IMG/VR virus record: IMGVR_UViG_3300032334_002567
Location: 248,001 to 312,000 of that record
Length of the DNA: 64,000 nucleotides
Strand: one strand, 5' to 3'
In this document: positions 23,197-63,440 of the stretch, piece after piece
How the letters are laid out: each line of letters begins with the position of its first letter
How positions within the stretch are numbered: the stretch's first letter is position 1
Program-made: the position numbers and the translations under genes
Notes under the pieces: generated by a model
Seen by the model: only the letters and a program-made list of their open reading frames with translations
What the model was told of the DNA's origin: nothing
Databases searched by the model: none

Positions 23197-24065
23197 TTTA
23201 ACACTTTTTGAGTTAAAGGGTCCGGAAGGTCCACATGGAAAAGTTGAATGGTCCTAAAGGTCCGAAAGGGCCGAAGGGTCCAAAAGGACTTTTCTTGTCT
23301 AATTTTAAATTTGTGTACTGCCCGGATCATCTTTTATACGTTCAGCGCATATCTATATGTCAAAGAAACATGATCTAGGTACATGAAAGATCATGTTTTT
23401 TCGGATAAGTGAGTAAACCGGGTTGCTAAAAAATGAACACTTAAGTGCTTACTGGCATTAGACTTGTGAATATTCTTGCAATGCTGTAAGAATCTGTAAC
23501 CTCCTTATTTTATTGGGGTTATGGCTTGCAAAAATCATGAAGCAATTCCCAGATCTGTTCGTAGTCCTTTATTTGGTTTTTCCCGTTCGGGAATATCGGC
23601 TCTTAAGGGCTTATTTTTTCCCGTTCGGGAGTATTTTGTGAAGTTCTTTTGGACAACCTTGGGTCAGGGCTCTGAGAAAAGATGTTCTTTGGGACAAATT
23701 GTGGACGTGACCATAAGAGATAAAATGAAAACGCCCCCTTGCAATCATCAGTAAGAGTTGAGTTTTGACTGATTATTGGTCTTTTTGATTAAAATTGGTT
23801 TGAAAATTGTGGATTATCAGTAATTATCAGTTGAAACGGAGGTTGTGCAGGCTGAAAAGATGGATTTTAAGACCAACGGACTATGTGCCCATAAGAAAAG
23901 ATGGTGGTTTTTTCCTTTGATTGGTTATTTCCCGAGAAAAGAAGGTTTTTTGGGTCTTGACAGAGTTGGTCAAGGGGTGTGAAAGTTGATTTGTACCCAA
24001 TGGGGGCAATTTATTTGTACCCTAAGGAGATAGGGTATCGAGTAATTTAAAATTAGGGAGGGTTT

Positions 24066-24308
24066 ATGGATGATTCTGAGGCGGTTCGTCGTGCAATGGT
24101 GGAAGAGATCAATAGTTCGCCGGGGGATAGGGCTGAGTTGGAGGCTAGGTATGGGCAGGTGTGGGATACTTCGGAGCTTGGTCGTGATTTTGAGGTGGTG
24201 AGTTTTGCTGCTCCGTTGGTGATTGCTAGGAATAAGGCTACCGGAGAGGTTGGTTCATTGTTTTTCCAGCACATGCCCCGGTTTTATTGGGGATGGAAGG
24301 CTGACTAA
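24066..24308 (+). CDS. hypothetical phage protein
   Basis: GGAGG RBS; WDT.EL..DFEV..F.AP.V......G..GSL.FQH.PRFY. Confidence 0.75.
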   Translation: MDDSEAVRRAMVEEINSSPGDRAELEARYGQVWDTSELGRDFEVVSFAAPLVIARNKATGEVGSLFFQHMPRFYWGWKAD

Positions 24309-24325
24309 TTCCAAATTATACGAAA

Positions 24326-24353
24326 TTGACATTTTGATTGTACCCTATAGACT
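24326..24353 (+). promoter_or_regulatory. sigma70-type promoter with TTGTACCCTA inside the spacer
   Basis: TTGACA-16 bp-TAGACT upstream of the ruvB-like gene and array 1. Confidence 0.65.
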
Positions 24354-24379
24354 TGTTTCGTATAAAAGCAGGAGGTTCT

Positions 24380-25465
24380 ATGATTCCACAGGGTGAGTTG
24401 ATTTTCTGGGGGCCGAAGCATGAGGACAATCTTCCTATGCCTAGTAGGGAGGATAGGTTGAAGCGGGTGGACTCTGGCAATCCTTCTAGTCCGTTTAGCC
24501 GGTTCGTTGGTAATGAGCGGGCTGTTCGGAAGATGCAGGCTGCTGTGTATAGTGCGTTGGGCCGTCCGAATCATATCCAGCGTGATTTGGCGTTTGCCAT
24601 CTTTGGGCCTGCGTCTAGTGGCAAGACTACTTTGGCTCGGCTTTATGCTGATTCTGTAGAGTTGCCGTTGGTGGAGGTTAGTCCCAAGAGTATTCGGACT
24701 ACGGATGATCTTTTGGAGTTCATTCGTGCGACTTTGCTGGAGACAGAGGTTCCGTTGGTGGATTGTGGTACGGATCAGTTTGTGTTGCCTCCGATGGTGG
24801 TGTTTATTGACGAGGTTCATGCACTGAGTCGTTCGGTGGTGGATGGTCTGTTGAAGGCTACGGAATATAAGGATGCCATTCTTGTGACGGACGGTGGTTC
24901 AACCGTTGACTGTCATAACGTGACATGGATGATTGCGACAACGGATGAGGGTCGGTTGTTTGATGCGTTCCGTACTCGTTTTAGCCCGATTATGTTGCAG
25001 TATTTGACTAAGGCCGAAGTGGCGAAGATTGTTAGCATGGCTCATAAGGATTTGCCTTCTGAGGTGTGTATGTTGGTGGCTCACTATAACAGTCGGATTC
25101 CCCGTAAGGCTTTGGAGTTTGCTAGGTACATGAAGATGGTTCGTGATATGCACCCTGAGATGACTTGGGAGGACGTTGCCCGTCAGGTTGCTGGTGATGA
25201 GGGGATTGACGAGTATGGGATGCAGGAGCTTCATTTGAAGGTCTTGCGGGCTTTGGGTCAGGGGCCGGTTGCTCGTAATCGTATAAGTTTGGTTGTGGGC
25301 AGGAAGATTGAGGAAGTGGAGCGGTACATCATGCCGTGGCTGTTGAGTGAGACAGAGGATCAGCCTGCGATGGTTACTGTGTCGAGCAAGGGCTATGTGA
25401 TTACTAGGGCTGGGCTTGACGAATTGGAGAAACGTGGTATAAGCTATGTGGCTGAAGCTGCGTGA
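24380..25465 (+). CDS. ruvB: RuvB-like Holliday junction branch migration AAA+ ATPase
   Basis: F..FVGN, GPASSGKTTLA (Walker A), FIDEVHAL (Walker B), ATT..G.L..AFRTRF, PR.A, GID..G...GP...E.Y..P.L C-terminal winged helix; AGGAGG RBS before ATG 24380. Confidence 0.8.
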   Translation: MIPQGELIFWGPKHEDNLPMPSREDRLKRVDSGNPSSPFSRFVGNERAVRKMQAAVYSALGRPNHIQRDLAFAIFGPASSGKTTLARLYADSVELPLVEVSPKSIRTTDDLLEFIRATLLETEVPLVDCGTDQFVLPPMVVFIDEVHALSRSVVDGLLKATEYKDAILVTDGGSTVDCHNVTWMIATTDEGRLFDAFRTRFSPIMLQYLTKAEVAKIVSMAHKDLPSEVCMLVAHYNSRIPRKALEFARYMKMVRDMHPEMTWEDVARQVAGDEGIDEYGMQELHLKVLRALGQGPVARNRISLVVGRKIEEVERYIMPWLLSETEDQPAMVTVSSKGYVITRAGLDELEKRGISYVAEAA

Positions 25466-26198
25466 ACCAATAAGTTCGATTTTGCACACTGAAGAAGTGA
25501 ACCACTTCCATAGATTTAGCAAGTTCTGTGAGTGAACCACTATAGGGAATTTTACACAAAGCCGTAGTGAACCTTGGATGATGATTTTATATTCGCACTG
25601 AGTGAACCATTAGAAGAGATTTTACATGCCCCACGAGTGAACCATTGAAGCCGATTTTACATGATGAAATAGTGAACCACGGTTTAGGATTTTACATTTT
25701 GACAGAGTGAACCAGCCTCGAAGATTTTACACTGAAGTTGAGTGAACCAGGGACCGGGATTTTACATGGGATCCACAGTGAACCAAGTGGTACGATCTTA
25801 CAGTCAAGAAGAGTGAACCATCAAAAGCAATTTTATAGCGACGTTGAGTGAACCAGACTTTCGGATTTTACATCACGACCGAGTGAACCATATCCGCTGA
25901 TTTAAATAACGGAAAAGAGTGAATCACGCAATACGATTTTTAACACAACGCCCGAGTGAACCAAGAAAACGGATTTCAACATAATCCGATAGTGAACCAT
26001 TGGGCATTTTTTTGCAATGAGAGCGAGTGAACCAAATAGATCGATTTTACATACCGTGCGAGTGAACCAGGGGAGAAGATTTTATAGGTTTGGAGAGTGA
26101 ACCGTGTAGATCGATTTAGCATACAGTTCGAGTGAACCAATTCTTCAGATTTTACATGATGAGTAAGTGAACCATAAATTTGATTTAGCATAAAGGAA
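25460..26198 (+). ncRNA. TIGR-like dual-repeat guide RNA array 1 (about 21 units of 35 nt)
   Basis: alternating (G)AGTGAACCA and GATTTTACA repeats separated by unique 8-nt spacers; edge repeats at 25460, 25495, 25530 ... 26130, 26165. Confidence 0.88.
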
Positions 26199-26209
26199 TT
26201 GTACCCTAT

Positions 26210-26539
26210 ATGGATGCTCGGGTAGCTTTGCATACCATGATGTTGGCACTTGGGCGTGAAGGAGCGACTCCGATGGTCAGGATGGAGTCTGGGTACAGTA
26301 TCAAGAACAACAAGTTCCTAAAAAGATTAAAGAAAAAGTTTAAGAGGCACGGGCCGTGCAGGGTTCCAGAATATGAAGATTATTTTCTTCTAAGTTCGGA
26401 ACCTTATTTTGTTTATAAATATGCGGAGATTATTGGTGCAAACAAAATGCCTGAGCCTTTGCATCGAAAGATGTTAAGTTTTGCTATTATGAATCCGAAT
26501 AATTATTATGTGAAGCGTTATTTAAGTCAAAGGAGTTGA
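26210..26539 (+). CDS. phage helical-repeat family protein
   Basis: C-terminal YA......MPE.LHRKML......NNYYVK.Y shared with paralogs. Confidence 0.6.
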   Translation: MDARVALHTMMLALGREGATPMVRMESGYSIKNNKFLKRLKKKFKRHGPCRVPEYEDYFLLSSEPYFVYKYAEIIGANKMPEPLHRKMLSFAIMNPNNYYVKRYLSQRS

Positions 26540-26543
26540 GAAG

Positions 26544-27377
26544 ATGCCTTACCAGCAAAGATTTTTGGTTTTGGATGGCAGCGAAACTTTTAATTATAAT
26601 AGGGCTTCTTCTGATGTTAAGAGTAAACAACCAGCGGCTAAGTTTTGTCCCATTCTTCTGAGTGTTCCAGATAATATCTTCTCAAATTGTAAAAACATTG
26701 AGGATCGTCTTGAAGATTGGGTGAAGAAGGTTTACGCCCAAAAGAATGAATTGCAGCTTTGGTCTGGACATATGTTGGTTGTAATGACAGAGGAGCAGTG
26801 TAGTTCTAATCATCAGATGAATCTTGTATTTAATAGTTATAATTGGAATAATGTTTTACCTTCTTGGCTGAATGTTCCTACTGATGCTACTACAGCAATT
26901 ACATTTGTTAAGGATGTTGGCGTTAATCTTCCTGAGTTTGAGCCTGTAATTAGTCAAGAATCAAAGACAAGTTACGAGTACGCTATTATCTTGAGGAAGA
27001 GATTTGAGATGGGAGAACCGGCTATTGCTAAGGATGCTGGTTTGAGTTGTCGTTATGCTAAGGAAATTATTGGTGGTAGGTTTTTGCTTGGAGAGCCTAC
27101 TATTGCCCAGCATGAACGTGCTGCTGACTTGTATGCTGAGAAGATCAGGGAGTGGCGTTTGTGGGGAGAGTTCAGTCATGAAACCCTGATGACGAGTCCG
27201 GTTTGGATGTATCATTATGCCAAGGATTTTTGTGGAGGTCGTTTGCCTGAGAATCTCCATAATCGGATGTTGATGATGAGTGTGATGGAACCGAATAATT
27301 ATTGGGTGAAGCGGTATAGTGCCAAGAAGTATCAGAAGAAGAAGCGGGCGCCAAAAGCTAATTTAGAAAATGCTTGA
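26544..27377 (+). CDS. phage helical-repeat family protein
   Basis: YA..I...RF..GEP.IA repeats; GRLPENLHNRML...NYWVK. Confidence 0.75.
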   Translation: MPYQQRFLVLDGSETFNYNRASSDVKSKQPAAKFCPILLSVPDNIFSNCKNIEDRLEDWVKKVYAQKNELQLWSGHMLVVMTEEQCSSNHQMNLVFNSYNWNNVLPSWLNVPTDATTAITFVKDVGVNLPEFEPVISQESKTSYEYAIILRKRFEMGEPAIAKDAGLSCRYAKEIIGGRFLLGEPTIAQHERAADLYAEKIREWRLWGEFSHETLMTSPVWMYHYAKDFCGGRLPENLHNRMLMMSVMEPNNYWVKRYSAKKYQKKKRAPKANLENA

Positions 27378-27401
27378 CAAGTCTATTATCTGTGGTATAA
27401 T
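27374..27401 (+). promoter_or_regulatory. strong sigma70-type promoter of array 2
   Basis: TTGACA-16 bp-TATAAT with extended TGn. Confidence 0.85.
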
Positions 27402-27407
27402 GGTTTT

Positions 27408-27555
27408 AACCAAGGTAGTCGATTTTTTAAGTTCAAATAGTGAACCATATTGCCGGATTTTATATCAGGCTGAAGTGAACCATAGCAAAGGATTTTGCAT
27501 CGGCTGAAGAGTGAACCATCGCCCAGTGATTTCAACAAGATCAACAAGTGAATCA
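27408..27555 (+). ncRNA. TIGR-like array 2 (about 4 units)
   Basis: AACCA-aggtagtc-GATTTTTTA-agttcaaa-TAGTGAACCA-tattgccg-GATTTTATA-tcaggctg-AAGTGAACCA-tagcaaag-GATTTTGCA-tcggctgaa-GAGTGAACCA-tcgcccagt-GATTTCAACA-agatcaac-AAGTGAATCA. Confidence 0.85.
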
Positions 27556-28085
27556 TGAATCTGAAGTTTGGCATTAAACCGAGTGACGACGATTGGACGG
27601 CAGAAAAAGAGCTTTCTTATAAAGCTGCTAAGGCTGCTTTTCAAAAGTTTTTTAATGGTGAAAAATTAAGTCGTGAATTAGAGAAGATTATTGCGTCAGA
27701 CGCTACTTGGAGCTGTCAGTATGCTGCTGCATTAAAGGATAGGTTTATACTGGGCGAACCTATTATTGCTTCTAAAGCGAGAACAGCAGGTTGGTATGCT
27801 CGTCATATTATCCGGGGTCCGTGGCCTGAAGGCGAGTCTGGAATATCCCAAAGTGCATATTTCGTATGTGCATATATTTGTGATGTTTTAAACGGGAGCA
27901 GGGTATCTGATTTAATTCACAGAAATATGTTGGCTTTGCTTATAGAAAACCCATCAGATTATTGGGTGCTTGAATATATGCACTATAGAGAATGGCTTGA
28001 TGGTCACGTTGCAGAGCCTAGTTGGGTTCGTCAGGGAAATTGGAATTATGGCGGGGTTACGCAAGAATATTTAAATTCGAATTAG
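27555..28085 (+). CDS. phage helical-repeat family protein
   Basis: YA..L..RF.LGEP.IA, YA..II.GPWPEGE, IHRNML...DYWV. Confidence 0.75.
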   Translation: MNLKFGIKPSDDDWTAEKELSYKAAKAAFQKFFNGEKLSRELEKIIASDATWSCQYAAALKDRFILGEPIIASKARTAGWYARHIIRGPWPEGESGISQSAYFVCAYICDVLNGSRVSDLIHRNMLALLIENPSDYWVLEYMHYREWLDGHVAEPSWVRQGNWNYGGVTQEYLNSN

Positions 28086-28130
28086 GGCAAATGAATTGTA
28101 CCCTATGAAGTTATCGAAAGGAGATTTCTG

Positions 28131-28850
28131 ATGGACATTCTCACTGATAATTGGGTTCAAGTATTCCCTAATATGCTGCATTATGCTTCTAGGACTGGTG
28201 GGCGGGTTCCTGAATTTGAGCCGCTGTTTATTCAGGATGCTGATGCTGCTTCTAGCTATGCAGCTGGATCTATTCATGGGCGTTGGCCAGAAGCAGAAGA
28301 AATTATAGCTACTAATTCTGGTGCTGCTCTTAATTATGCCCGTAAAGTAATTGCGGGTAAGTGGGAACCCGGAGAGGCTGCTATTGCTACTAATCCTAAA
28401 GATAGCTACTGGTATGCCACTTATGTTCTCAAAGGCAGCTTCCCAGAAGGCGAAGCGGAAATTGCTAAACATCCTGACCTTAGTTTTGATTATGCAAGAA
28501 ATGTGATTTATGGTCGGTTTATTGCTGGTGAAGCTGAGATTGGCAAGTTAGAAGTCACTGGCTTTAATCCCAAGATGGCTTTAGATTATATGAATCTTTG
28601 GGTGAAGGGTAATTGGTCGGGTTGGACTGAAGATCAGATTCGTGTGTGTCCTTGTTGGCTGTATAACTATGCCAAGCAGCATTGTAAGGGTAGGCTTCCA
28701 GATAATCTTCATAATGCTATGCTGACATTTGGCATGACAATTAATGAGAATTATTGGGTGAAGAAGTATTTTAAGGCTGCGAAGTACCAGAAGAAGATTA
28801 AGCGGCGCAATCCACCGGAGATGGCTGCTCCTATTGTTATCCCTGATTAA
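28131..28850 (+). CDS. phage helical-repeat family protein
   Basis: four ~23-aa YA..V..G.W.E.E..IA repeats; GRLPDNLHNAML...NYWVK. Confidence 0.8.
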   Translation: MDILTDNWVQVFPNMLHYASRTGGRVPEFEPLFIQDADAASSYAAGSIHGRWPEAEEIIATNSGAALNYARKVIAGKWEPGEAAIATNPKDSYWYATYVLKGSFPEGEAEIAKHPDLSFDYARNVIYGRFIAGEAEIGKLEVTGFNPKMALDYMNLWVKGNWSGWTEDQIRVCPCWLYNYAKQHCKGRLPDNLHNAMLTFGMTINENYWVKKYFKAAKYQKKIKRRNPPEMAAPIVIPD

Positions 28851-28860
28851 GGAGTATTTT

Positions 28861-29046
28861 ATGAATCTATCCCCTCGGCAGTCTTTAGTTCTTAAGGCAA
28901 TTTTGGTTTATGTGGACAAAGATTTGAGTAATATCAATGATTTCTTCACCCAGTTTGACGGGGCATTTGTAGTTAATGGTGAAGACACTCAGCCCATTGA
29001 AGAATCTGAGATTATTGAGCTTTGGAGTTTAGCGGGTGGAAACTGA
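28861..29046 (+). CDS. hypothetical protein
   Basis: AAGGAG RBS before ATG 28861. Confidence 0.6.
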   Translation: MNLSPRQSLVLKAILVYVDKDLSNINDFFTQFDGAFVVNGEDTQPIEESEIIELWSLAGGN

Positions 29047-29539
29047 AAAAGTTATTTTTGATAATGACGAACATTCTATAACGGTTAAACCCGTTACGTT
29101 AATTTTCAATAATACTTATGGGGAGAGTGTATATCCTGAACGGGTAATGATTGATTCAAATATGACTTTGGATCATTTTAAAACCCTAAAGGAGATTGAT
29201 CCTTATACGGCTGCTTTTTTTAAATTTGTTGTGGATGATTATCCTCATCCTGTGATGAAGAGTTTTCTTGAGAAGTCGGCAATTGGATGTCGTCATTTAA
29301 TTGGATTGTTTTCTTTGAGCTTGGAGCTGCTGAGTCAACAGAAAAAGTTCGGTTGGAAGTATCCAGAGGCTAATCTTCATCCTAGACAACAGTTAAATTT
29401 AGCAGATGCTTTGATTGTTTTTGGGCAACCAGAGCGATTTGTTAAATTGGTGAAATATGTGCAAGCTGGGTTCTTTGACCAGTATCAAATGTGTGCAAAA
29501 GAATCTTGGCGTGATGAAGCGTTCAGGGTGATGTCTTGA
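29036..29539 (+). CDS. hypothetical protein
   Basis: 167-aa ORF, GGAG RBS. Confidence 0.65.
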   Translation: METEKVIFDNDEHSITVKPVTLIFNNTYGESVYPERVMIDSNMTLDHFKTLKEIDPYTAAFFKFVVDDYPHPVMKSFLEKSAIGCRHLIGLFSLSLELLSQQKKFGWKYPEANLHPRQQLNLADALIVFGQPERFVKLVKYVQAGFFDQYQMCAKESWRDEAFRVMS

Positions 29540-29563
29540 CATTAGTGTTTTCTGTGGTATACT
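29536..29563 (+). promoter_or_regulatory. sigma70-type promoter of the putative sRNA
   Basis: TTGACA-16 bp-TATACT with extended TGn. Confidence 0.8.
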
Positions 29564-29569
29564 GATCGG

Positions 29570-29766
29570 GCCGATCAAAACTTACCGTGCTTGTGCTGCT
29601 ATGGCATCCAGCAGAAACGGTGACTCAGCGGAAGGTAGTCGGCTGATCTGCCCGTAAGACTCCGGGCAGTTAGCTAAACGTCCGCAGTTCATAACACATT
29701 CACCCTCCGTCCTTTCTAATGTGTGTATGAATAGGTCTGCCTCCTCAAAAGAGGCAGACTTTTTTT
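29570..29766 (+). ncRNA. putative ~200-nt structured small RNA
   Basis: lies between a promoter and an intrinsic terminator, no convincing ORF; helices ACCGT/ACGGT, CTGCT/AGCAG, GCGGA/TCCGC, CTGCCCG/CGGGCAG, TTCATAACACATT/AATGTGTGTATGAA. Confidence 0.7.
29735..29766 (+). terminator. intrinsic terminator
   Basis: GTCTGCCTC-ctcaaaa-GAGGCAGAC followed by T7. Confidence 0.85.
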
Positions 29767-29809
29767 GTACCCTATAGTTTTGTGTTCTCAACTTTTTAGG
29801 AGCTAAACC

Positions 29810-29965
29810 ATGGCTAAGGATGATAAGCCCCAGTTCGATCCTGATAGTGATGATGAGTATGACTATCTCAAGGAGAATTGGGAACCGGGTGATGAGCCTA
29901 TGAATGATCGTCAGCGTCGTGAAAATGAACAGTTGGATGAAGAGTACCGTCGTAACAAGTTTTAA
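29810..29965 (+). CDS. small acidic protein (51 aa)
   Basis: AGGAG RBS; MAKDDKPQFDPDSDDEYDYLKENWEPGDEPMNDRQRRENEQLDEEYRRNKF; below the ORF-track cutoff. Confidence 0.65.
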   Translation: MAKDDKPQFDPDSDDEYDYLKENWEPGDEPMNDRQRRENEQLDEEYRRNKF

Positions 29966-29986
29966 TTTTACAAAAGGAGTTTAACT

Positions 29987-31116: not shown

Positions 31117-31118
31117 AT

Positions 31119-31577: not shown

Positions 31578-31588
31578 GGGGCTTAATC

Positions 31589-56413: not shown

Positions 56414-56419
56414 AAGACC

Positions 56420-56662
56420 ATGTTCAAAATTGAAGATTTATGGATTGATTTGTCCCGTGCAAAAGATACGCAGGCACGGGGACTGAGCATGGGGAATCCT
56501 CCCTCTGGCAAAGATTTGGGTTTTAGTTGTGGAATAGGCAAGAATGTTGGTGGATTTTATCACTTAGATGTTTTTGATAGCAGAAAGACATTAGTTCTTT
56601 CGCTATGTCTGACCAAAGATGAGCTTATAAACCTTGTGATCGACGCAGAAAATACCATTTGA
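56420..56662 (+). CDS. hypothetical protein
   Basis: 80-aa ORF. Confidence 0.55.
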   Translation: MFKIEDLWIDLSRAKDTQARGLSMGNPPSGKDLGFSCGIGKNVGGFYHLDVFDSRKTLVLSLCLTKDELINLVIDAENTI

Positions 56663-56669
56663 GGACATA

Positions 56670-57440
56670 ATGGCTAAAACACCTACAAAGAATTATACGA
56701 ATCTTGATGTTCGAGTGAAAGTCTATAATAAGTGCAAAAAAGCTGAGAGACTTATTCTTCATGGTATCCCTTGGCCCCGTTATGCCGCTGATCGGGCTTA
56801 TCAATATGCTCGTTTTGTATTAAAGCATCGGTGGACAGCGGGCGAGAGGGTTATTCTCAAGTGCCCCCGGTCTGCCTATCTTTATGCTCGTCACGTTATT
56901 GGTGGTCGCTGGGAGAAGGCAGAGAAAATTATTGCTACTTCTTCTTATGCTTCTTATCAATATGCAAAGTATGTGTTGAAGGGTCGATTTCTTCGTGCAG
57001 AAAAGTATGCAAAGCAAACAAGAGCTGGCTGGATTGAATATGATGCCTCTAGGTATGCTTTCTATTATGCTAGAGACATTATCAAGGGACGTTGGAAAGA
57101 GGGTGAGAAACATATAGCCGCAGGTGGCGAAGTTGCTTGTCTTTATGCTAAGAACTTTCTGAAAGCACGGTTCAAAATTGCTGAGGACTGCATTATTCAT
57201 AGTGCCGAAAGTGCTGCTGAATATGCTATCTTCGTTTTAGGTAAGCGATGGAAGAATGCAGAAGATAGAATTCTTCGCAATGAGAGAGCTTTGACTAAGT
57301 ATATGGATTTCTTGAAAGGCGAAGATAAGATTGAGATGCACAACAAGATTCTGGCGGAGGTTATAAAGTATCCGAGTAGTTATAGTGCTGCTAAGCAATG
57401 GGTACAGAGTCATCCTGATTTTTCTAGGGACGCTTGTTGA
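56670..57440 (+). CDS. phage helical-repeat family protein
   Basis: six or more AY.YA..V...RW..AE..I repeats; MHNKIL. Confidence 0.8.
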   Translation: MAKTPTKNYTNLDVRVKVYNKCKKAERLILHGIPWPRYAADRAYQYARFVLKHRWTAGERVILKCPRSAYLYARHVIGGRWEKAEKIIATSSYASYQYAKYVLKGRFLRAEKYAKQTRAGWIEYDASRYAFYYARDIIKGRWKEGEKHIAAGGEVACLYAKNFLKARFKIAEDCIIHSAESAAEYAIFVLGKRWKNAEDRILRNERALTKYMDFLKGEDKIEMHNKILAEVIKYPSSYSAAKQWVQSHPDFSRDAC

Positions 57441-57452
57441 AAGGAATCAAAC

Positions 57453-57638
57453 ATGAAGTTTGCTGCCCTGTATAGATTTGCTTTGGAAAGAGGTTATACT
57501 ATCCACAAGACCAAAGCTTATGTAGAATGGATTCGAAATATAGATGGCACCAAAGGAATGTGTGAAACGTTGCAGGAGGCATATGATGAAATCCACCACG
57601 ATTACGAAGTCCGAAGAAACAAATTCCTTCAAGTATGA
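57453..57638 (+). CDS. hypothetical protein
   Basis: AAGGA RBS. Confidence 0.55.
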   Translation: MKFAALYRFALERGYTIHKTKAYVEWIRNIDGTKGMCETLQEAYDEIHHDYEVRRNKFLQV

Positions 57639-57814
57639 GGTTGGAGATTTTGTAATTCTGAAAATTGGCGATAAAAGATTTATCAATTGCCAGATTTTAG
57701 AAAGAATAAAAAAAGAAAAGAAATCGTATTACCGGGTTGATTGGACGCTATCAGGTCATCAGCAAATTCTAAATTCAGTTTTTGTTTGTGAAACAGCTAT
57801 AAAGGAGATCATTA

Positions 57815-58240
57815 ATGGAATATAGATACAATGATGGAGGACGAAAAGATACTGGATATAAAGGCAAAACTGGTGATTGCGTTACTCGATCCATTGCTAT
57901 TGCTACAGGGCTGCCCTATCAGCAGGTATACGACGACTTGAATGTTATTGCTGAAAGTGAGCGACCACGAGGAGAGAAAAAGCGTTCAAATGCTAGAACT
58001 GGTGTTCACAAACAAACTATAAAGAAGTATCTTGAGAGTCTTGGTTGGACATGGACACCCACCATGCACGTTGGTTCTGGCTGCAAAGTCCATCTTTGTG
58101 CAGATGAATTGCCGTCTGGTATTCTAATTGTTTCTGTGAGCAAGCATCTTACCGCTGTAATTTATGGTGTTATTCACGACACCCATGATTGCTCTAGGGA
58201 CGGCAAAAGATGTGTGTACGGATACTGGACTAAATCCTAA
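57815..58240 (+). CDS. hypothetical phage protein
   Basis: NDGGR..GYKG..GDCV.RSIAIA...Y..VY..L...H..AV..G.I.DT.D....RCVYGYW. Confidence 0.8.
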   Translation: MEYRYNDGGRKDTGYKGKTGDCVTRSIAIATGLPYQQVYDDLNVIAESERPRGEKKRSNARTGVHKQTIKKYLESLGWTWTPTMHVGSGCKVHLCADELPSGILIVSVSKHLTAVIYGVIHDTHDCSRDGKRCVYGYWTKS

Positions 58241-58260
58241 TTTTGAAAAAGGAACAATAT

Positions 58261-58476
58261 ATGGAACCACACTATCAGCCTGAAGATGATTTGCTATTGG
58301 TTCAAGAGGAAATGACAACGCCAATAAAATACATGGCAGTTTGTCAAAATGAAGGAAAGAACTTTCCTCTGACATATATTGTTGTTGATGCTACTTGTGA
58401 AGCAGATGCAATTCAGAATATTTTAGAAATGCACCCGAGCTTGAAGGTTCTAAAAGCGTATCCTTCAAAGGGGTAA
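58261..58476 (+). CDS. hypothetical protein
   Basis: AAGGA RBS before ATG 58261. Confidence 0.55.
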   Translation: MEPHYQPEDDLLLVQEEMTTPIKYMAVCQNEGKNFPLTYIVVDATCEADAIQNILEMHPSLKVLKAYPSKG

Positions 58477-58555
58477 TTAGGCAATATAGGCAATTTGTCT
58501 CTCTAAATAAATTGTACCCTAAAAGTGTGTTGGATCTAAACCCCGGAGCTATAAA

Positions 58556-58765
58556 ATGTCGAATCATACGAAGGATGCAGTGTTCATGCACACAAACACG
58601 GCTATGCAGGCCGCTGTGATCATGATGCAGCTTCCCAGCTTTTCTGAGCTTTCCGATGAGGAAAAGACTAAGCTGATGATGACGATTGCCATAAAGAGCA
58701 CGGATCGTATTATGGCTGTCATTGACCACGATGCCCGTGAAATTCCAGAGCCAAGTCTAAATTAG
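58556..58765 (+). CDS. hypothetical protein
   Basis: GGAG RBS after a motif copy. Confidence 0.6.
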   Translation: MSNHTKDAVFMHTNTAMQAAVIMMQLPSFSELSDEEKTKLMMTIAIKSTDRIMAVIDHDAREIPEPSLN

Positions 58766-58851
58766 TCATGAGAAGGCTCTACCCGTTTACGGACGAAAAC
58801 TTACGTCCAGTTGATATTTATAAACCCCTACTATCTTGTTGGAGAACTAAA

Positions 58852-59244
58852 ATGGGTCTTGATATGTTTGTCTATTCCGTTCCCGAAAGTCTTGTTGCCG
58901 ACAAAGGTGACACCGATGTTGTTCTTGAACTAGCTAGGGAAGTAAAGGAAGACGTTCACTATTGGCGCAAGCACCATGACCTTCATGGATGGATGGAAAA
59001 TCTGTATCGTGAGAAGGGTGGAGTCGCCCAATCTTTCAATTGCACCAATGTTCGATTGACCGAGGAAGACCTCGACAATTTGAAGAAAGACCTTCTTGAA
59101 CAACATCTGCCTAAAACAGAGGGATTCTTTTTTGGGAATAATCCTCCTGATGACGAAACCCTTGTTGATGATCTAGAGTTTATTGTGAAGGCAAGAGATG
59201 CTATAAAGAGCGGGAAGGCTGTTTTCTACGATAGTTGGTGGTAA
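58852..59244 (+). CDS. hypothetical phage protein
   Basis: MGLDM...YWRKH..LHGWM......FNC..V.LT.EDL..L...LP.TEGFFFG...FYDSWW. Confidence 0.8.
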   Translation: MGLDMFVYSVPESLVADKGDTDVVLELAREVKEDVHYWRKHHDLHGWMENLYREKGGVAQSFNCTNVRLTEEDLDNLKKDLLEQHLPKTEGFFFGNNPPDDETLVDDLEFIVKARDAIKSGKAVFYDSWW

Positions 59245-59473
59245 AGGAATAAATGGTGGAACTAAAAAAAGTTCAGTCTTGGGTAGAAGAATTCCCACCC
59301 CATTGGGATCTCTTTATTGACAAAACTGGTCGATTTCTAATCATTTCCAGTCCTGGCGGAACAACAATTTCTACATTGGAAATATCTGGAAATATAGAGA
59401 GATTTGATATTGGAACTTTGAAAGATAATTGTACCCTATCAGATTGCAAATTATAACTTTACCGGAGATACCA

Positions 59474-59710
59474 ATGAGCGGCTACAACGGATGGAAAAAT
59501 TGGGAAACTTGGAACGTAGTTCTCTGGATTGACAACGATGAGGGACTTTATAGCCTTCGCAAAGAGTGCGGAAACAATTATAATCGCTTCGTTTCAACCC
59601 TTGAAGAAATCTCTGAGGGTGAAATACGATACCGCACTCCAGACGGCGTGAGCTGGAATGATAGCGGAATCGACGTAGAAGAAATCAATAGCCACTGGGA
59701 GGATGAATAA
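59474..59710 (+). CDS. hypothetical phage protein
   Basis: YNGW.N.ETWNV.LWI.NDEGLY...TPDGV.W. Confidence 0.75.
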   Translation: MSGYNGWKNWETWNVVLWIDNDEGLYSLRKECGNNYNRFVSTLEEISEGEIRYRTPDGVSWNDSGIDVEEINSHWEDE

Positions 59711-59712
59711 GG

Positions 59713-59973
59713 ATGCACTCTCTGAAAGAAACACTTTGCAAAACACTGGATGACATCTTTTGCGACGTTTGTGGCGGATCTTGCAAAAAGATGATTGACG
59801 ATGAAGCATTCAACATCGAAAGTGCTTGTTTATCCGCAAATTGGGGATACGGCTCGCAACTTGATGGCGAAATGTATAGAATTGATATTTGTGAAGGTTG
59901 TTTTCAAAAGACCATTGGCTTTCTAAACAACAATCGAACTGTTGCGAACCCTTTAGCACCGCTAAACAACTAA
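59713..59973 (+). CDS. Zn-finger hypothetical protein
   Basis: CDVCG...WGYGS..DG.....DICE.C. Confidence 0.7.
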   Translation: MHSLKETLCKTLDDIFCDVCGGSCKKMIDDEAFNIESACLSANWGYGSQLDGEMYRIDICEGCFQKTIGFLNNNRTVANPLAPLNN

Positions 59974-60112
59974 AAGATAGCTTTAGGGTACAATTTGTGA
60001 ATGATTTCTTTGGAATCCTTGTAGTCGGTATTTGTGCAGTTATCGGTCAGGTTATCGGTCAGATCATCGTTAGAAGATAATTGTACCCTAAATCTAAAAC
60101 TAAGGAGCTAAT

Positions 60113-60322
60113 ATGGAAATCAAGATTTTTATTGGCGACATCGATGAGTTTTATAGTGATGCAAAAGAGGGAAACCGTCGCTGGGCGGTCTGGTCTAATT
60201 ATGGTGATAGTGGCAAGTTAGTAGAAAAACTTCTTGGCCGCTTTGAAACAGAAGAAGAAGCAGTTCAGTTTGCCAACGAATACGATCCTGGTGAGGGAAA
60301 GACTAAAGTAATTGTACCCTAA
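60113..60322 (+). CDS. hypothetical protein
   Basis: AAGGAG RBS; C-terminus (IVP) encoded by the motif. Confidence 0.65.
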   Translation: MEIKIFIGDIDEFYSDAKEGNRRWAVWSNYGDSGKLVEKLLGRFETEEEAVQFANEYDPGEGKTKVIVP

Positions 60323-60347
60323 ATCTATACCACTACAGGGGAAATAA

Positions 60348-61040
60348 ATGGAACGCCTTTACCACGGTACGTCTTCTAAGAATCTCAATAAAATCCTCGA
60401 AAACGGAATCCAGCCCCGAGGAAAGCGAAAAAGCAACTGGAAAGAATATCCCAGTCGCTCAGACATGGTTTATCTGACCAATGCTTATGCTCCCTTTTTT
60501 GCAGTTCAGAGCTGCAAGAAAAATGAAAAAGCATTGGTTCTGGAACTTGATAGAGATTCTCTGGATGCCAGCAATGTTTATCCTGATGAAGATTTCATTG
60601 CTCAAGCAATCGCCCAACAAACAAATGGCTCAATCGAAGATGTGCATGAGGCAGTTCGTGAGAATCTGGAAGATTACCAGCACCACACAGATGATAGCTT
60701 GGGTGGTCTGGGTAATGCTTGCTACAAGGGAACGGTTCCCCAGAATGCAATTACTCGTTATTGTTTGATTGATATAAAAGAGCGGCCTGATCTTGGAATG
60801 ACCGTCCTTGACCCTTCAATTAGCCTCTTAAACTATAAGTTTTGTGGAAGTCGGTATCGTTCGATTATAGCTTGGCTATTTGGTGATAGAGCCGATTTTG
60901 AAATTAGTATTGGGTCAAACGATACTTGGTTTCAAATGATGGAAACACAACAGCCCGGATATACTGAAAACATTAAAACGTTTTTCACAAATCGAGCTGG
61001 TATCGAGGTTGTCGAATCTAAAATAATTGTACCCTGCTAA
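60348..61040 (+). CDS. ADP-ribosyltransferase-fold (Tpt1/KptA-like) protein
   Basis: LYHGTS..NL..IL..GI.P ... VYLT ... VLE.D ... Y.G.VP..AI. Confidence 0.6.
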   Translation: MERLYHGTSSKNLNKILENGIQPRGKRKSNWKEYPSRSDMVYLTNAYAPFFAVQSCKKNEKALVLELDRDSLDASNVYPDEDFIAQAIAQQTNGSIEDVHEAVRENLEDYQHHTDDSLGGLGNACYKGTVPQNAITRYCLIDIKERPDLGMTVLDPSISLLNYKFCGSRYRSIIAWLFGDRADFEISIGSNDTWFQMMETQQPGYTENIKTFFTNRAGIEVVESKIIVPC

Positions 61041-61056
61041 GGTAAGGAGAAACCGA

Positions 61057-61452
61057 ATGACTTTCAATCTCAATGAGTATTTTGCTAATCCGGCTAATTT
61101 CACTAAGCATGGCAGTAGCTTTGTCATGTTCAAGCGGATTTTTTGTGCCGATGGTCTGACTTTTTCTGCTCAAGTTAGGGAGAGTGCTTACTGCACTCCC
61201 CGGCAAGACAATGGCCCATGGACTGCCGTGGAAGTCGGCTTTCCCAGTGAGAAGGTCGATGAGTTTATGCAGTACGCAGAGAATGCCGATGACCCCACTG
61301 GCACTGTGTATGGTTGGGTTCCGGTCGAGGTTGTGGAGCAAGTTGTTGAGAAGCATGGTGGTCTTATGCTCCAAGAGAGTAAGGAAGCAAAAATCACTGA
61401 ACTCAACAAGCAAATCAAAGAGCTTCAGAGTAAAGTCAAAGAGCTGTCTTGA
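61057..61452 (+). CDS. hypothetical phage protein
   Basis: I.CADG..FS.Q.....YC.PR...GP...VEVGFPS...YAE....PT.TVYG.VP. Confidence 0.75.
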   Translation: MTFNLNEYFANPANFTKHGSSFVMFKRIFCADGLTFSAQVRESAYCTPRQDNGPWTAVEVGFPSEKVDEFMQYAENADDPTGTVYGWVPVEVVEQVVEKHGGLMLQESKEAKITELNKQIKELQSKVKELS

Positions 61453-61496
61453 TTTGTACCCTATGTTTTTGTGAATAACCCCCTTTGGAGATAATC

Positions 61497-61736
61497 ATGA
61501 AAGCTATTGTTGCCGGACAGACTAGCCGGGGAAACGATTACTATAAGTTTGAAATGAGCGAGCAAGAGTTTGTTGCTTGCGACAATGACAATGAAGGCTT
61601 GTGCGTCTTTTGCGGCGAGCCAGCTTATGATGTTGAACCCGATGCTCGTAAGTATGCTTGCGAAAGCTGTGAGAAGAACGGTGTTTACGGTACGCAGGAA
61701 CTCTTGATGATGGGATACATCAAGTTCACTGAATAG
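61497..61736 (+). CDS. Zn-finger hypothetical protein
   Basis: G.C..CG.....VEPDARKY.CE.C....VYG. Confidence 0.75.
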   Translation: MKAIVAGQTSRGNDYYKFEMSEQEFVACDNDNEGLCVFCGEPAYDVEPDARKYACESCEKNGVYGTQELLMMGYIKFTE

Positions 61737-61917
61737 CCAGTTGTAGGTCGGCCCATATGGTAAGGGTCACGGCAAGGGTTGAATTATATGGGAAAACAAA
61801 AGGTTTGCTGAAATAAAATGGGCTAAGCCCGGCGACACTCCCGCCCCGTGACTACCCGCAACTGCTAAATATAAATTGTACCCTAAAAGTTTGTTCGATC
61901 CCCAAAGGAGATAAGCA

Positions 61918-62226
61918 ATGACTTGCTACATCATTGACGAAAACAACGAGCTTGGCCTTGGCGATGATGTTGAAATCGGTGTTGAAGTGAATTACACCGC
62001 CAACAGTGCTTCCGGCCCTAGCTGGAATGAATGGAGCGGTGGAGATCCGGGTTCCTCGGCTTTCCTCGACATTCATGGTTGGTCTGTCGATTCGATCACG
62101 GTCGGAAAGACTCTGGTTGATTATGACACTCTGCCTGAGGAAACTAAGAAAAAGATCGACGGTTTTATCGATAGCAGCTTCGATGACATCGAAGCTCAAA
62201 TCTGGGCTTCAGTGAGCGATGGGTGA
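61918..62226 (+). CDS. acidic hypothetical protein
   Basis: AAGGAG RBS after a motif copy. Confidence 0.65.
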   Translation: MTCYIIDENNELGLGDDVEIGVEVNYTANSASGPSWNEWSGGDPGSSAFLDIHGWSVDSITVGKTLVDYDTLPEETKKKIDGFIDSSFDDIEAQIWASVSDG

Positions 62227-62232
62227 AGGGGC

Positions 62233-62260
62233 TTGACAAACTAATTGTACCCTGTAAAAT
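62233..62260 (+). promoter_or_regulatory. sigma70-type promoter with TTGTACCCT inside the spacer
   Basis: TTGACA-16 bp-TAAAAT. Confidence 0.65.
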
Positions 62261-62285
62261 GGAAGCAACACCCCCCGGAGATCCA

Positions 62286-62558
62286 ATGATGACAAGCGTT
62301 TATGCGAAGATTACTGGTCGTGGCGAGTTTCCAATGGATATGCTGCGGTATGACAGTTGCAGCCCTGCTACTGAGTCCGACAGCTATTTGATTGCTCGCA
62401 CCTTTCATGACTTTGATAGGTGGGAGATTTTTGTGAAGTGCCGCCCGCTGGAGAAGAGGCGTTCTCCTTGGACGGTTGGCAGGTGGGAGAGCTTCGGTTG
62501 CAAGATCGAAGAAATTGACTATCATCCGCCACTTACCCGCAACACACAGCTTGCCTAA
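62286..62558 (+). CDS. hypothetical phage protein
   Basis: G.G.FP.DMLRYD.C.P...T..RW.SFG. Confidence 0.7.
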   Translation: MMTSVYAKITGRGEFPMDMLRYDSCSPATESDSYLIARTFHDFDRWEIFVKCRPLEKRRSPWTVGRWESFGCKIEEIDYHPPLTRNTQLA

Positions 62559-62564
62559 GCTGTT

Positions 62565-62647
62565 GCCGAAGTGGTGAAATTGGCATACACGCCAGACTCA
62601 AAATCTGGTGCCCAAAAGGCGTGTGGGTTCGACCCCCACCTTCGGCA
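62565..62647 (+). tRNA. tRNA-Leu(CAA)
   Basis: GCCGAAG/CTTCGGC acceptor, CCAGA-CTCAAAA-TCTGG, long variable arm. Confidence 0.92.
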
Positions 62648-62777
62648 TATTTAAATTGTACCCTAACAAAACGTTCCGATGGTGCCAACGCATTCGCTAG
62701 GTGTTGGGCTTGGGTAAATGGTTGCCTTCTCAACCAGCCAACGGAACACTGATCTTAACCCCAACGGAGATAACCAA

Positions 62778-63035
62778 ATGGATAACTATGTTCATTTTGA
62801 TGGTGAGTACGCTGATATTCCTGAGCTTACCCAAGGTGCTATCTTGCGGTATGTGCTTCAAAAGATTCCCCCCGGCAGTTTTCTGACGGCGGTTCTTTGC
62901 AATGACCTCTATAACGCAACGGGTAGGGCAGATGCAAATAATCTGGTAGCTCTGCCTCTTATCGTGCGATGGTTTGCTAACAAGTGTCCGCATCTTTACG
63001 GTGCAGATAATATGTACAAGTACCTCGGCACCTAA
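62778..63035 (+). CDS. hypothetical phage protein
   Basis: RY....IPPGSFL.AVL.NDL..A..RAD..N. Confidence 0.75.
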   Translation: MDNYVHFDGEYADIPELTQGAILRYVLQKIPPGSFLTAVLCNDLYNATGRADANNLVALPLIVRWFANKCPHLYGADNMYKYLGT

Positions 63036-63088
63036 ATAAAAATTGTACCCTATAAAGTTGTCCTTCTAACCCCCAACGGAGCTAACTT

Positions 63089-63400
63089 ATGCGTTATGCT
63101 GATTCCCGCTGTGAGATGATCGAAACTTACCAGCCTGATCACACCTACACCTTTGTCGGCCCGTGCATCGTGACCGGCAAGGAGCAGCGTGTCACGGTCA
63201 AAGCTCCCGACCTTTTCAAGTATCGGACGGGAGCATATGTTCAGGACGCTTTCCCCTACCTTGATGCCGCTGATCGTGAGTTTCTCATGACCGGCATGAG
63301 TGCAGAAGGTTGGCTTTTGACCTTCGGTGACGGTGCGGAAGACGATGAAGATTATGAAGATGATTGGGATGATGATGGAGAGCTTGGGGATCGGGATTGA
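63089..63400 (+). CDS. hypothetical phage protein
   Basis: G...QDAFP.L.A..REFL.TG....W...FG with acidic tail. Confidence 0.75.
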   Translation: MRYADSRCEMIETYQPDHTYTFVGPCIVTGKEQRVTVKAPDLFKYRTGAYVQDAFPYLDAADREFLMTGMSAEGWLLTFGDGAEDDEDYEDDWDDDGELGDRD

Positions 63401-63440
63401 TTTGTACCCTAACTCTAACTCTACTCCCAAAGGATTATCT

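What the first reader, a model, noticed from the sequence alone, without database searches (positions are those of the whole stretch)
23991..63411. About 45 copies of a strand-polarised TTGTACCCTA element organise the whole right arm
Seen: nearly every transcription unit from 24 kb onward is preceded, typically 20-60 nt before the start codon, by (AAAATAA)TTGTACCCT(A). 44 copies are on + and one is on -, and I saw none in 1-23.9 kb. Twice it sits inside the spacer of a TTGACA/-10 promoter (24326, 62233), and once directly upstream of a -35 (50650). Inference: a phage-specific early/middle promoter element or activator box (for a phage sigma, RNAP or MotA-like factor), or an RNA processing site. 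I do not recognise the motif.
Basis: partly seen in the sequence, partly recalled or inferred. Interest (0 to 1): 0.75.

Follow-up and report, generated by a model that had tools for sequence, protein, structure and literature searches.

The report
Phage-specific promoter of a jumbo-phage island
An invariant 10-base signal in front of roughly two of every three genes in a 51-kb island of an uncultured freshwater jumbo phage is most likely a phage-specific promoter read by the host RNA polymerase carrying a phage sigma factor, and it also seems to mark where gene cassettes are swapped between strains.

Summary
The window has 43 exact + copies of TTGTACCCT, a near-copy at 23,991 and one - copy, against 0.3 expected, and none before 23.9 kb. 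The window is part of a 381-kb viral record with 76 +/4 - copies. Of the + copies, 72 fill a GC-rich 51-kb island (genome 272.0-322.6 kb) of about 105 mostly small + strand genes. The element is about 28 bp (tAAAWTAA-TTGTACCCTA-6N-YR). It has no degenerate copies, lies a median 35 nt before start codons, and sometimes directly abuts terminators. Shine-Dalgarno sequences never start before +17. In a diverged relative (G008) with the same TGTACCCTA core, SDs or the ATG itself start at +16. This puts the RNA 5' end 6-7 nt after the core and the core at -15 to -7, an extended -10 geometry. No phage RNA polymerase was detected, but several sigma genes were. The sigma at 197.5 kb co-varies with the motif: G008 (55% identity, same recognition helix) has the same core, and G002 (37%) has a different one. 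Strain contigs break preferentially at motif/leader copies. Best reading: a new phage-sigma promoter class acting as a PeSL-like modular cassette. No transcript data exist.

The parts
24015..64000 (+). Window part of the motif-bearing, GC-rich hyperplastic island (whole island: genome 272,015-322,628, which is window 24,015 to 10.6 kb beyond the right edge). Plus-strand 9-mer copies start at 24015, 24338, 26199, 28096, 29765, 31356, 31800, 33177, 33597, 36937, 38726, 39462, 39742, 40336, 40710, 42000, 44331, 46619, 46976, 48246, 48770, 49182, 49797, 50157, 50650, 50708, 51221, 52409, 52668, 54282, 55464, 56403, 58512, 59429, 60081, 60312, 61027, 61454, 61876, 62245, 62656, 63043, 63402.
   Evidence: GC is 0.41-0.48 in the island against 0.33-0.37 elsewhere.
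23991..24000 (+). Near-copy (TTGTACCCAA) 24 nt before the first full copy, at the left edge of the island.
24338..24347 (+). Copy leading the AAA+ (RuvB_N/AAA/RuvB_C-like) gene at 24,380-25,465. This is the first sizeable gene of the island in both G000 and G008 (64% identity).
29765..29774 (+). Copy whose upstream base is the last T of a hairpin plus T-run terminator, leaving no room for another promoter.
40710..40719 (+). Copy leading the CbbQ/MoxR-like AAA+ gene (40,776-41,924). The G002 ortholog (55-58% identity) is led by G002's own motif instead.
42000..42009 (+). Copy leading the VWA/CobT-like gene (42,052-44,259). Its G002 ortholog is likewise led by the G002 motif (L061 11,179).
54282..54291 (+). 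Copy abutting a terminator and leading gene 54,328-54,804. The G008 ortholog (50% identity) is also motif-led, and only the core plus TGT is shared upstream.
56403..56412 (+). Copy followed by an ATG at motif position +17 with no Shine-Dalgarno (80-aa ORF 56,420-56,662). Candidate leaderless mRNA.
59984..59993 (-). The only minus-strand copy in the window. No convincing gene lies downstream of it.
46976..46985 (+). Variant (T at position 10, poor flanks, lowest matrix score) inside an ORF. Probably a non-functional or decayed copy.
50650..50717 (+). Two copies 58 nt apart before one gene (50,754-51,023).

Best explanation
The element is a phage-specific promoter. The sequence shows an about 28-bp signal with three parts: an A/T-rich upstream part that often supplies the previous gene's stop codon, an invariant core TTGTACCCTA, and six variable bases followed by a pyrimidine-purine step. 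It is repeated before about two thirds of the genes of a 51-kb accessory island. From this I infer that transcription starts at the purine 6-7 nt after the core. That places TGT-ACCCTA (or TG-TACCCT) at about -15 to -7, the position of an extended -10 element, with no -35 element. I also infer that it is read by the host core RNA polymerase carrying a phage sigma-70-family factor. The most likely reader is the RpoD/RpoS-like sigma at genome 197.5 kb, which has a host-type promoter of its own and so would be made early. That would make the island a delayed-early or middle regulon. A full copy also precedes a divergent sigma-like gene at 211.8 kb, which suggests a cascade. Because the promoter and leader are near-identical over 30-50 nt, they probably also serve as homology patches where promoter-gene cassettes are gained, lost and exchanged.
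For: Enrichment and polarity. It is the top 10-mer of the genome. No degenerate copies exist. Copies are intergenic with a tight leader length. Eleven of 72 copies abut a hairpin plus T-run, against 5.5% at random positions, and most T-variant copies in G008 follow T-runs. RNA 5' end: in G000, SD starts have a sharp left edge at +17, five SDs start exactly there, Y16R17 holds in 64 of 74 sites, and one copy has an ATG at +17. In G008, Y15R16 holds in 49 of 51 sites, five SDs start at +16, two ORFs have the ATG at +16 and two at +19. Machinery: no beta/beta' hits, no two-barrel catalytic motif in any frame, and the only T7-RNAP-family hit is 12 bits inside a tape-measure-like giant protein. Sigma genes are present and have host-type promoters. 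Co-variation: G008's sigma ortholog is 55% identical overall and 78% in region 2, with the same ...YATWV(L/V)KKNFFRD helix, and G008 has the same core in 51 copies. G002's ortholog is 37% identical overall and 43% in region 2, with a different helix, and G002 has a different core, CTGCGATAA-(6N)-G, at the same places, including before orthologous genes. Footprint: orthologous G000/G008 gene pairs share only the core plus TGT upstream. Cassettes: 22 of 39 strain-contig breakpoints lie in motif/leader zones that make up 20% of the sequence (p about 5e-7), and one joint is a precise one-cassette deletion.
Against: There are no transcript data, so the start site is inferred from SD and ATG positions only. 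The assignment to the 197.5-kb sigma rests on three lineages. A second full-length sigma at 330.4 kb is also early-type. It was not found in G008, but that record is only 69% complete. Both registers are somewhat atypical. TACCCT keeps the usual TAnnnT form, but TG then sits directly next to it and the discriminator is 7-8 nt. ACCCTA lacks an A at -11. The conserved span of about 26-28 bp is longer than a sigma alone needs. G000 is only 79% complete, so a polymerase gene could lie in the missing part. The three other sigma-ortholog records examined in full (G007, G010, G011; 10-40% fragments) show no motif block. G009 and G012 were only searched for the 9-mer, without a hit.
Confidence: 0.62

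Rival explanations
1. It is a promoter for a phage-encoded RNA polymerase that went undetected. That could be a single-subunit or non-canonical enzyme, either unrecognisable by sequence or encoded in the missing ~21% of the genome. It would work like the phiKZ/AR9 virion-polymerase early promoters or T7-type promoters.
For: The element is a long, contiguous, all-or-none consensus with the start about 6 nt downstream. This is the architecture described for AR9/phiKZ virion-RNAP promoters, which have a conserved element, then 6N, then G+1, and tolerate almost no deviation (PMC5312081). The conserved span of 26-28 bp exceeds what a sigma usually contacts. The record is 79% complete.
Against: PF00562 and PF00623 gave no hit even at E<=1. 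No D[FYW]D[GAIVS]D motif occurs in six frames of G000 or G008. PF00940 hit only at 12 bits, in hydrophobic repeats of a tape-measure-like protein whose family profile matches no polymerase. The motif co-varies with a sigma lineage.
Confidence: 0.12
2. It is an RNA-level signal: a site where an endoribonuclease cuts polycistronic RNA 6-7 nt after the core, producing the 5' ends that the SD and ATG positions imply.
For: The element is strand-polarised and intergenic at a fixed distance from the SD. Most copies have no terminator upstream, so they would be transcribed by read-through. Several copies directly follow tRNA genes.
Against: Copies that abut terminator T-runs, and the first copies of the island, would have no upstream transcript. 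The upstream half differs completely between G000 (A/T-rich) and G008 (TAGGTCYA) while the geometry to the start is kept. No conserved RNA structure and no Rfam match were found. Back-to-back divergent copies share a spacer in the way divergent promoters do.
Confidence: 0.08
3. It is a box for a phage activator that re-targets the host sigma-70 holoenzyme (MotA/AsiA-like sigma appropriation), not a sigma-specific -10 element.
For: An invariant box lies upstream of many genes, and the host-type machinery is evidently used for other phage genes.
Against: A MotA-type box sits near -30 and needs a TAnnnT -10 element about 12-13 bp downstream (own knowledge of T4 middle promoters). Here, positions +22 to +28 carry almost no information. 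A start near +34 would lie at or past the start codon in about a dozen sites, or would exclude their SD.
Confidence: 0.06
4. It is a protein-binding operator or recombination site rather than a promoter. It could be a polarised repressor site like the mycobacteriophage 'stoperators', or a cassette-recombination site like an integron attC.
For: The short asymmetric site is invariant, oriented with transcription, and found in short intergenic gaps. Strain breakpoints cluster at it.
Against: This does not explain the fixed YR step or the SD/ATG left edge, nor the placement after terminators. No integrase was seen among the 10 larger island ORFs scanned against Pfam. There was only a sub-threshold 37-residue IS110-type match. 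Breakpoints spread over the motif, the leader and the ATG, as expected for homologous exchange rather than a defined crossover point.
Confidence: 0.05

Closest known systems
PeSL (promoter-early stem-loop) regulatory cassettes of T4-type phages (PMC2839356, PMC4122927)
   Same: The elements are repeated promoter (+/- terminator) units with an SD and start codon at the 3' end. They are concentrated in hyperplastic regions full of small orphan genes. Indels and replacements between related phages have crossovers inside the repeated element. In both systems the signal is kept while the genes turn over.
   Different: PeSL promoters are strong host sigma-70-like -35/-10 promoters, and a G/C stem-loop is a defining part. 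Here the promoter is not sigma-70-like, and only about 15% of copies in G000 abut a terminator (more in G008). The phages are not T4-type as far as tested. Mini-circles were not examined.
Promoters of phage-encoded sigma factors (SPO1 gp28 and gp33/34 classes; T4 late TATAAATA read by gp55; own knowledge)
   Same: The phage encodes its own sigma-70-family factor(s), and a phage-only consensus marks a temporal gene class. A -10-type element without a -35 can suffice, and sigma cascades occur.
   Different: The sequence is unrelated and C-rich. The conserved span is much longer (26-28 bp), density is far higher (about one per 1.4 genes), and the copies are all-or-none. Neither sigma specificity nor timing has been shown here.
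Virion-RNA-polymerase early promoters of phiKZ-like and AR9 jumbo phages (PMC5312081)
   Same: The host is a jumbo phage. There are tens of copies of an extended, highly conserved contiguous element with the start about 6 nt downstream, and the system is very intolerant of deviation.
   Different: Those elements are AT-rich and are read by a phage multisubunit polymerase. No such polymerase genes or catalytic motif are detectable in G000 or G008.
T7-type single-subunit polymerase promoters (own knowledge)
   Same: The consensus is about 23 bp and nearly invariant, with an A/T-rich upstream part and a specific core.
   Different: There is no T7-type polymerase gene. Conservation here stops 6 nt before the start instead of running through +1.

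Membership tests
Sigma-70-family extended -10 promoter | TG motif just upstream of a -10 hexamer placed about -12 to -7 | tested here: inconclusive
   With the start inferred at +16 (G008) or +17 (G000), TGT-ACCCTA spans -15 to -7 (G008) or -16 to -8 (G000). The alternative register, TG-TACCCT, keeps TAnnnT but puts TG adjacent to the hexamer. The start site is inferred, not measured.
Sigma-70-family extended -10 promoter | Start site 6-8 nt after the hexamer, usually a purine after a pyrimidine | tested here: met
   Y-R is at +16/+17 in 64 of 74 G000 sites and at +15/+16 in 49 of 51 G008 sites. The SD/ATG left edge coincides with it. This is indirect evidence.
Sigma-70-family extended -10 promoter | A cognate sigma factor is available | tested here: met
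   There are two full-length region 2 + region 4 sigma genes (197.5 and 330.4 kb), a region-2-only ORF, and a weak sigma-like ORF. The 197.5-kb lineage co-varies with the motif.
Sigma-70-family extended -10 promoter | Holoenzyme binds and initiates at the site | not testable with these tools
   No RNA run was listed. The phage is uncultured.
PeSL-type mobile regulatory cassette | Repeated promoter unit flanking small variable genes in a hyperplastic region | tested here: met
   72 copies serve about 105 genes. Only 7 of about 104 island genes have homologs in G008, and 2 ORFs of the G002 locus have homologs in the G000 island.
PeSL-type mobile regulatory cassette | Recombination between copies creates indels or replacements between related phages | tested here: met
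   Breakpoints are enriched at motif/leader zones (22 of 39 against 20% of sequence). One joint, 5350->5604, removes exactly one cassette. Caveat: the contigs are short, and repeats attract alignment breakpoints.
PeSL-type mobile regulatory cassette | The promoter part is a host sigma-70-like -35/-10 promoter | tested here: not met
   There is no -35/-10 pair in register, and sigma-70-like matches are at chance.
PeSL-type mobile regulatory cassette | A stem-loop terminator is part of the unit | tested here: inconclusive
   It is present directly upstream of 11 of 72 copies in G000 and before most T-variant copies in G008, but absent from the majority.
phiKZ/AR9-type virion-RNAP early promoter | Phage-encoded multisubunit RNA polymerase | tested here: not met
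   Searches were all negative, within records that are 79% and 69% complete.
T7-type promoter | Phage single-subunit (PF00940) polymerase | tested here: not met
   The only hit is 12 bits, below the cut-off, and lies in a non-polymerase giant protein.

The most novel reading that the evidence does not exclude
A lineage of freshwater jumbo phages carries a private sigma/promoter pair. An RpoD-like phage sigma reads a C-rich, -35-less extended -10 element (TGTACCCTA). The pair has been re-tuned to an unrelated sequence in a sister phage, which would make the two systems naturally orthogonal. The promoter-leader unit doubles as the homology module that assembles and reshuffles a GC-rich island of tens of single-gene cassettes. 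That would be a PeSL-like mechanism built on a phage-only promoter instead of a host-type one.
Probability: 0.35. Interest if true: 0.62.

Novelty: new member of a known kind. Interest (0 to 1): 0.5.

Why it matters
If confirmed, the finding gives three things:
- A ready-made transcription map of an uncultured jumbo phage: about 75 promoters, with start sites predicted to within a base or two.
- A naturally diverged set of sigma/promoter pairs (G000/G008 versus G002) that could show how -10 recognition is re-tuned, and that could serve as orthogonal expression parts.
- A second, independent example, outside T4-type phages and on a non-host promoter, of regulatory repeats acting as the joints for modular gene shuffling in a hyperplastic region.

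It is not a new principle of phage gene control.

Tried and rejected
**Giant 4,404-aa ORF (genome 348,024-361,238) as an N4-like virion polymerase: rejected.**
- The PF00940 hit was 12 bits.
- The whole protein matched no solved structure.
- A 21-sequence family profile shows a coiled coil plus hydrophobic Gly-rich repeats and matches only low-complexity chains.
- No PHROG family matched.

**Phage multisubunit polymerase.** Pfam searches and a six-frame catalytic-motif scan were negative.

**RNA evidence.** No RNA run was listed, only DNA runs.

**Literature.** A search for the 9-mer returned only unrelated primer hits.

**Overlap with sigma-70-like promoters.** This is at chance level.

**Bipartite reading of G000 (core as -35, second element at +23 to +28).** There is no consistent second element. 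The implied start near +35 conflicts with SD and ATG positions.

**Dense k-mers in other relatives that turned out to be something else.**
- L074's GGCCCCGGA is mostly the 5' arm of a terminator hairpin.
- L105's TCTTGGTCT is a clustered 6/12-nt iteron.
- G007's 47-copy repeat is a 27-nt coding tandem repeat.

**Other negatives.**
- Close CbbQ relatives L062-L066 have no dense invariant motif.
- The prediction that KKN(F/Y)F-type sigma carriers G007, G010 and G011 hold the motif could not be tested. These 10-40% fragments show no block.
- The 338-aa (G000) and 274-aa (G002) sigma-like proteins behind outlier copies are not detectably related to each other.
- G008 has no copy before its ortholog of the 338-aa gene, so the 'cascade' link is not general.


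Full report
**Observation.** TTGTACCCT occurs 44 times in the window: 43 on +, and 1 on - at 59,985-59,993. Shuffles give 0.31 expected, and no copy lies before 24,015. The window is bases 248,001-312,000 of a 381,443-bp linear viral record that CheckV rates 79% complete. Genome-wide there are 76 + and 4 - copies. Of the + copies, 72 lie in one stretch at 272,015-322,628. It is therefore an internal island that runs past the window's right edge, not a chromosome arm. TTGTACCCTA is by far the most over-represented 10-mer in the genome.

**Anatomy.** Aligning the 72 island copies gives tAAAWTAA-TTGTACCCTA-nnnRnn-TGTtc.
- The core is all-or-none. A matrix scan that would tolerate a mismatch finds no degenerate copy anywhere.
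- Three + copies are poor-scoring and lie inside ORFs (153,906; 192,831; window 46,976).
- Two out-of-island copies, at 198,762 and 211,741, carry the full extended motif in intergenic DNA.
- About 105 + strand genes share the 72 copies, roughly 1.4 genes per copy.
- The distance from core end to start codon has a median of 35 nt, and most values are between 19 and 46 nt.
- The upstream TAAAATAA often contains the previous gene's stop codon.
- Eleven of 72 copies abut a hairpin plus T-run, against 5.5% of random positions. In clear cases (window 29,765 and 54,282) the T-run runs straight into the motif.
- In 312-323 kb the whole unit is conserved: the core, five variable bases, GTGTTCGATCC, CCCCAACGGAG, then the ATG.
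- Three - copies sit 18-27 bp upstream of + copies, just after bidirectional terminators.

**Where the RNA starts (inferred).** In G000, Shine-Dalgarno sequences have a sharp left edge at motif position +17.
- Five sites have AAGGAG starting exactly there, and only two sites start earlier.
- Positions +16/+17 are pyrimidine-purine in 64 of 74 sites.
- The copy at window 56,403 has an ATG at +17 and no SD.

The relative G008 has the same core (see Relatives below).
- Positions +15/+16 are pyrimidine-purine in 49 of 51 sites.
- Five SDs start at +16.
- Two ORFs of 97 and 88 aa have their ATG exactly at +16, and two more have it at +19.

These independent constraints place the 5' end 6-7 nt after the core. 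The shared TGTACCCTA then lies at about -15 to -7. From general knowledge of sigma-70-family promoters, that is where an extended -10 (TGn plus hexamer) sits. No -35 element is conserved.

**Context.** The island is GC-richer than the rest of the genome (0.41-0.48 against 0.33-0.37) and has a strong positive GC skew.
- It encodes accessory functions: MoxR/CbbQ AAA+ ATPases, VWA proteins, a DUF2201 metallopeptidase, a ligase and UvdE.
- It also holds five tRNAs and many small ORFs.
- The motif-free left part of the window holds tail-type genes.
- Sigma-70-like promoter matches inside the island are at chance, 38 found against 33.9 +/- 6.6.

**Which polymerase.**
- No beta or beta' domains were found, and no two-barrel catalytic motif in any frame.
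- The only T7-RNAP-family match is 12 bits, inside a 4,404-aa protein. That protein's family profile shows a coiled coil plus hydrophobic repeats and matches no polymerase.
- The phage has two full-length sigma-70-family genes: 197,511-198,389 (RpoD/RpoS-like) and 330,421-331,332 on the - strand. It also has a FliA-like region-2-only ORF.
- The ClpX-like/sigma operon that contains the 197.5-kb gene is preceded by TTTACA-N16-TAAAAT, and the 330.4-kb gene by TTGTCA-N16-TATAAT. Both sigma genes therefore look host-transcribed.
- The outlier copy at 211,741 precedes a 338-aa ORF with weak sigma-family matches (phrog_351 at 3.5e-4, TIGR02937 at 3e-6). That ORF is followed by an SNF2 helicase.

**Relatives.**
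- *G001* (146 kb, another sample) is the same phage with identical spacing. This supports contiguity of the island with both of its flanks.
- *G002* (155 kb; its CbbQ ortholog is 55-58% identical) lacks the motif but has CTGCGATAAAAA-N10-cTAGtG. The 10-mer CTGCGATAAA occurs 13 times, all on +. Eleven copies fill the homologous, again GC-richer, island up to the contig end. Another lies directly before a sigma-like gene at 69,950. The two genes shared with G000 are led by each phage's own motif.
- *G008* (340 kb) has TGTACCCTA 51 times on + and once on -, all within 265.3-293.0 kb. That stretch has GC 0.52-0.53 against 0.45-0.49 for its flanks. The consensus is TAGGTCYA-KTGTACCCTA-GnGGGY-R, and many copies follow terminator T-runs.
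- Only 7 of about 104 G000 island genes have homologs in G008.
- Both islands open with the same AAA+ gene (64% identity).
- In three orthologous pairs that are motif-led in both phages, the upstream DNA shares only the core and TGT.

**Sigma co-variation.** The 197.5-kb sigma lineage is the only sigma found in all three phages.
- G008's ortholog is 53-55% identical overall and 78% in region 2. The helix that I align by eye with sigma-70 region 2.3-2.4 reads YATWV(L/V)KKNFFRD in both G000 and G008.
- G002's ortholog is 32-37% identical overall and 43% in region 2, and reads YCTWVLMNNSLRD there.
- Same helix goes with same core, and different helix with different core. This is suggestive, but it rests on three lineages.

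**Strain variation.** Only DNA runs hold the sequence. They are lake and freshwater metagenomes from several studies. Short contigs from four of those studies, laid on the densest 6 kb, are mosaic.
- 22 of 39 breakpoints fall in motif/leader zones that make up 20% of the stretch (p about 5e-7).
- Three breakpoints lie exactly 2 nt before a core.
- One joint (5350->5604) removes exactly one promoter-gene cassette.
- None of the 40 listed substitutions hits a core, but only about 1.3 would be expected to.
- Repeats attract alignment breakpoints, so I treat this as moderate evidence.

**Reading.** The best-supported mechanism is a phage-specific, -35-less, extended -10-type promoter read by host core polymerase with a phage sigma. 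That sigma is probably the 197.5-kb one, which would make the island a delayed-early or middle regulon. The repeated promoter-leader would then also serve as the homology patch for cassette exchange, as PeSLs do in T4-type phages (PMC2839356, PMC4122927). The architecture also resembles the AR9/phiKZ virion-polymerase promoters, which have a conserved element, then 6N, then G+1, and are intolerant of change (PMC5312081). No such polymerase is detectable here. RNA processing, an activator box and an operator or recombination site are less consistent with the terminator junctions and with the SD/ATG edge.

**Limits.** The start site, the timing and the sigma assignment are all inferences. All the genomes are incomplete metagenomic records, and the host is unknown.

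Noticed in passing
window ~25,490-26,190 (also ~27,509; genome 171,242/171,277): A tandem array with a 35-bp period, (G)AGTGAACCA-N8-GATTTTACA-N8. It has nine strict units plus degenerate ones, all on +, and lies directly after the AAA+ (RuvB_N/AAA/winged-helix) gene that opens the island in both G000 and G008. It looks like iterons of a replication origin or a centromere next to its initiator. No equivalent array was found at the matching place in G008.
   Followed up: partly
window 45,662-45,849 (+): Group I catalytic intron (Rfam RF00028, 52 bits against a gathering score of 50). The only megablast hit of the region to a public phage record (92% over 72 nt, a marine uncultured phage) falls inside it.
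   Followed up: no
genome 317,030/317,057, 319,989/320,024, 321,404/321,430 (L017); G008 268,241/268,257 and 284,448/284,464; window 59,984-59,993 (lone - copy): Back-to-back inverted motif pairs 16-27 bp apart, just after bidirectional terminators, are conserved as an arrangement in two diverged phages. The - copies would fire straight into the terminator hairpin and might make very short antisense RNAs.
   Followed up: partly
island versus rest of genome in G000 (272-323 kb), G008 (265-293 kb), G002 (142-155 kb): In all three phages the motif-bearing island is 4-10 GC points richer than the rest of the genome. I have no explanation. Possible sources are foreign gene supply, expression-linked bias, or biased gene conversion.
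   Followed up: partly
outside the island, e.g. genome 98,560, 120,105, 176,478, 177,475, 262,201, 265,712, 266,737: ATATATAA(t) lies 20-45 nt before many start codons outside the island. It is 10-16x enriched in upstream regions, though its total count is at the level composition predicts. It may be a T4-late-like promoter class for another of the phage's sigma-like proteins.
   Followed up: partly
genome 348,024-361,238 (L013), outside the window: A 4,404-aa protein belongs to a family of 2,500-5,400-aa proteins from huge-phage contigs with no Pfam annotation. It has an N-terminal coiled coil followed by repeated hydrophobic Gly-rich segments, which looks like a tape-measure or ejection protein.
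   Followed up: partly
genome 312-323 kb (L017); in the window e.g. after 63,043: The conserved 5' leader contains GTTCGATCC, which resembles a tRNA T-loop/T-arm sequence, followed by CCCCAACGGAG. Whether the leader has an RNA function or is conserved only by descent is unknown.
   Followed up: no
window, 25-40 nt upstream of copies at 31,800, 36,937, 40,336, 40,710, 42,000, 46,619, 48,246: A second recurrent A/T-rich motif, CTAATTTAAAAT(T) and variants, often overlaps the stop codon of the upstream gene. I did not analyse it.
   Followed up: no
genome 162,412-163,624 (L016); G008 48,034-49,489: A 96-aa FliA/WhiG-like sigma region-2-only ORF is followed at once by a 304-aa ORF with no family match. 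The pair is conserved in G008 (48% and 37% identity). It may be a split or highly reduced sigma.
   Followed up: partly
L074 (IMGVR_UViG_3300044957_000763, 478,840 bp, direct terminal repeats): Another jumbo phage with a CbbQ-like homolog has GGCCCCGGA 20 times in 21 kb, on the + strand only, between stop and start codons. The motif is often the 5' arm of a terminator hairpin but sometimes stands alone.
   Followed up: partly
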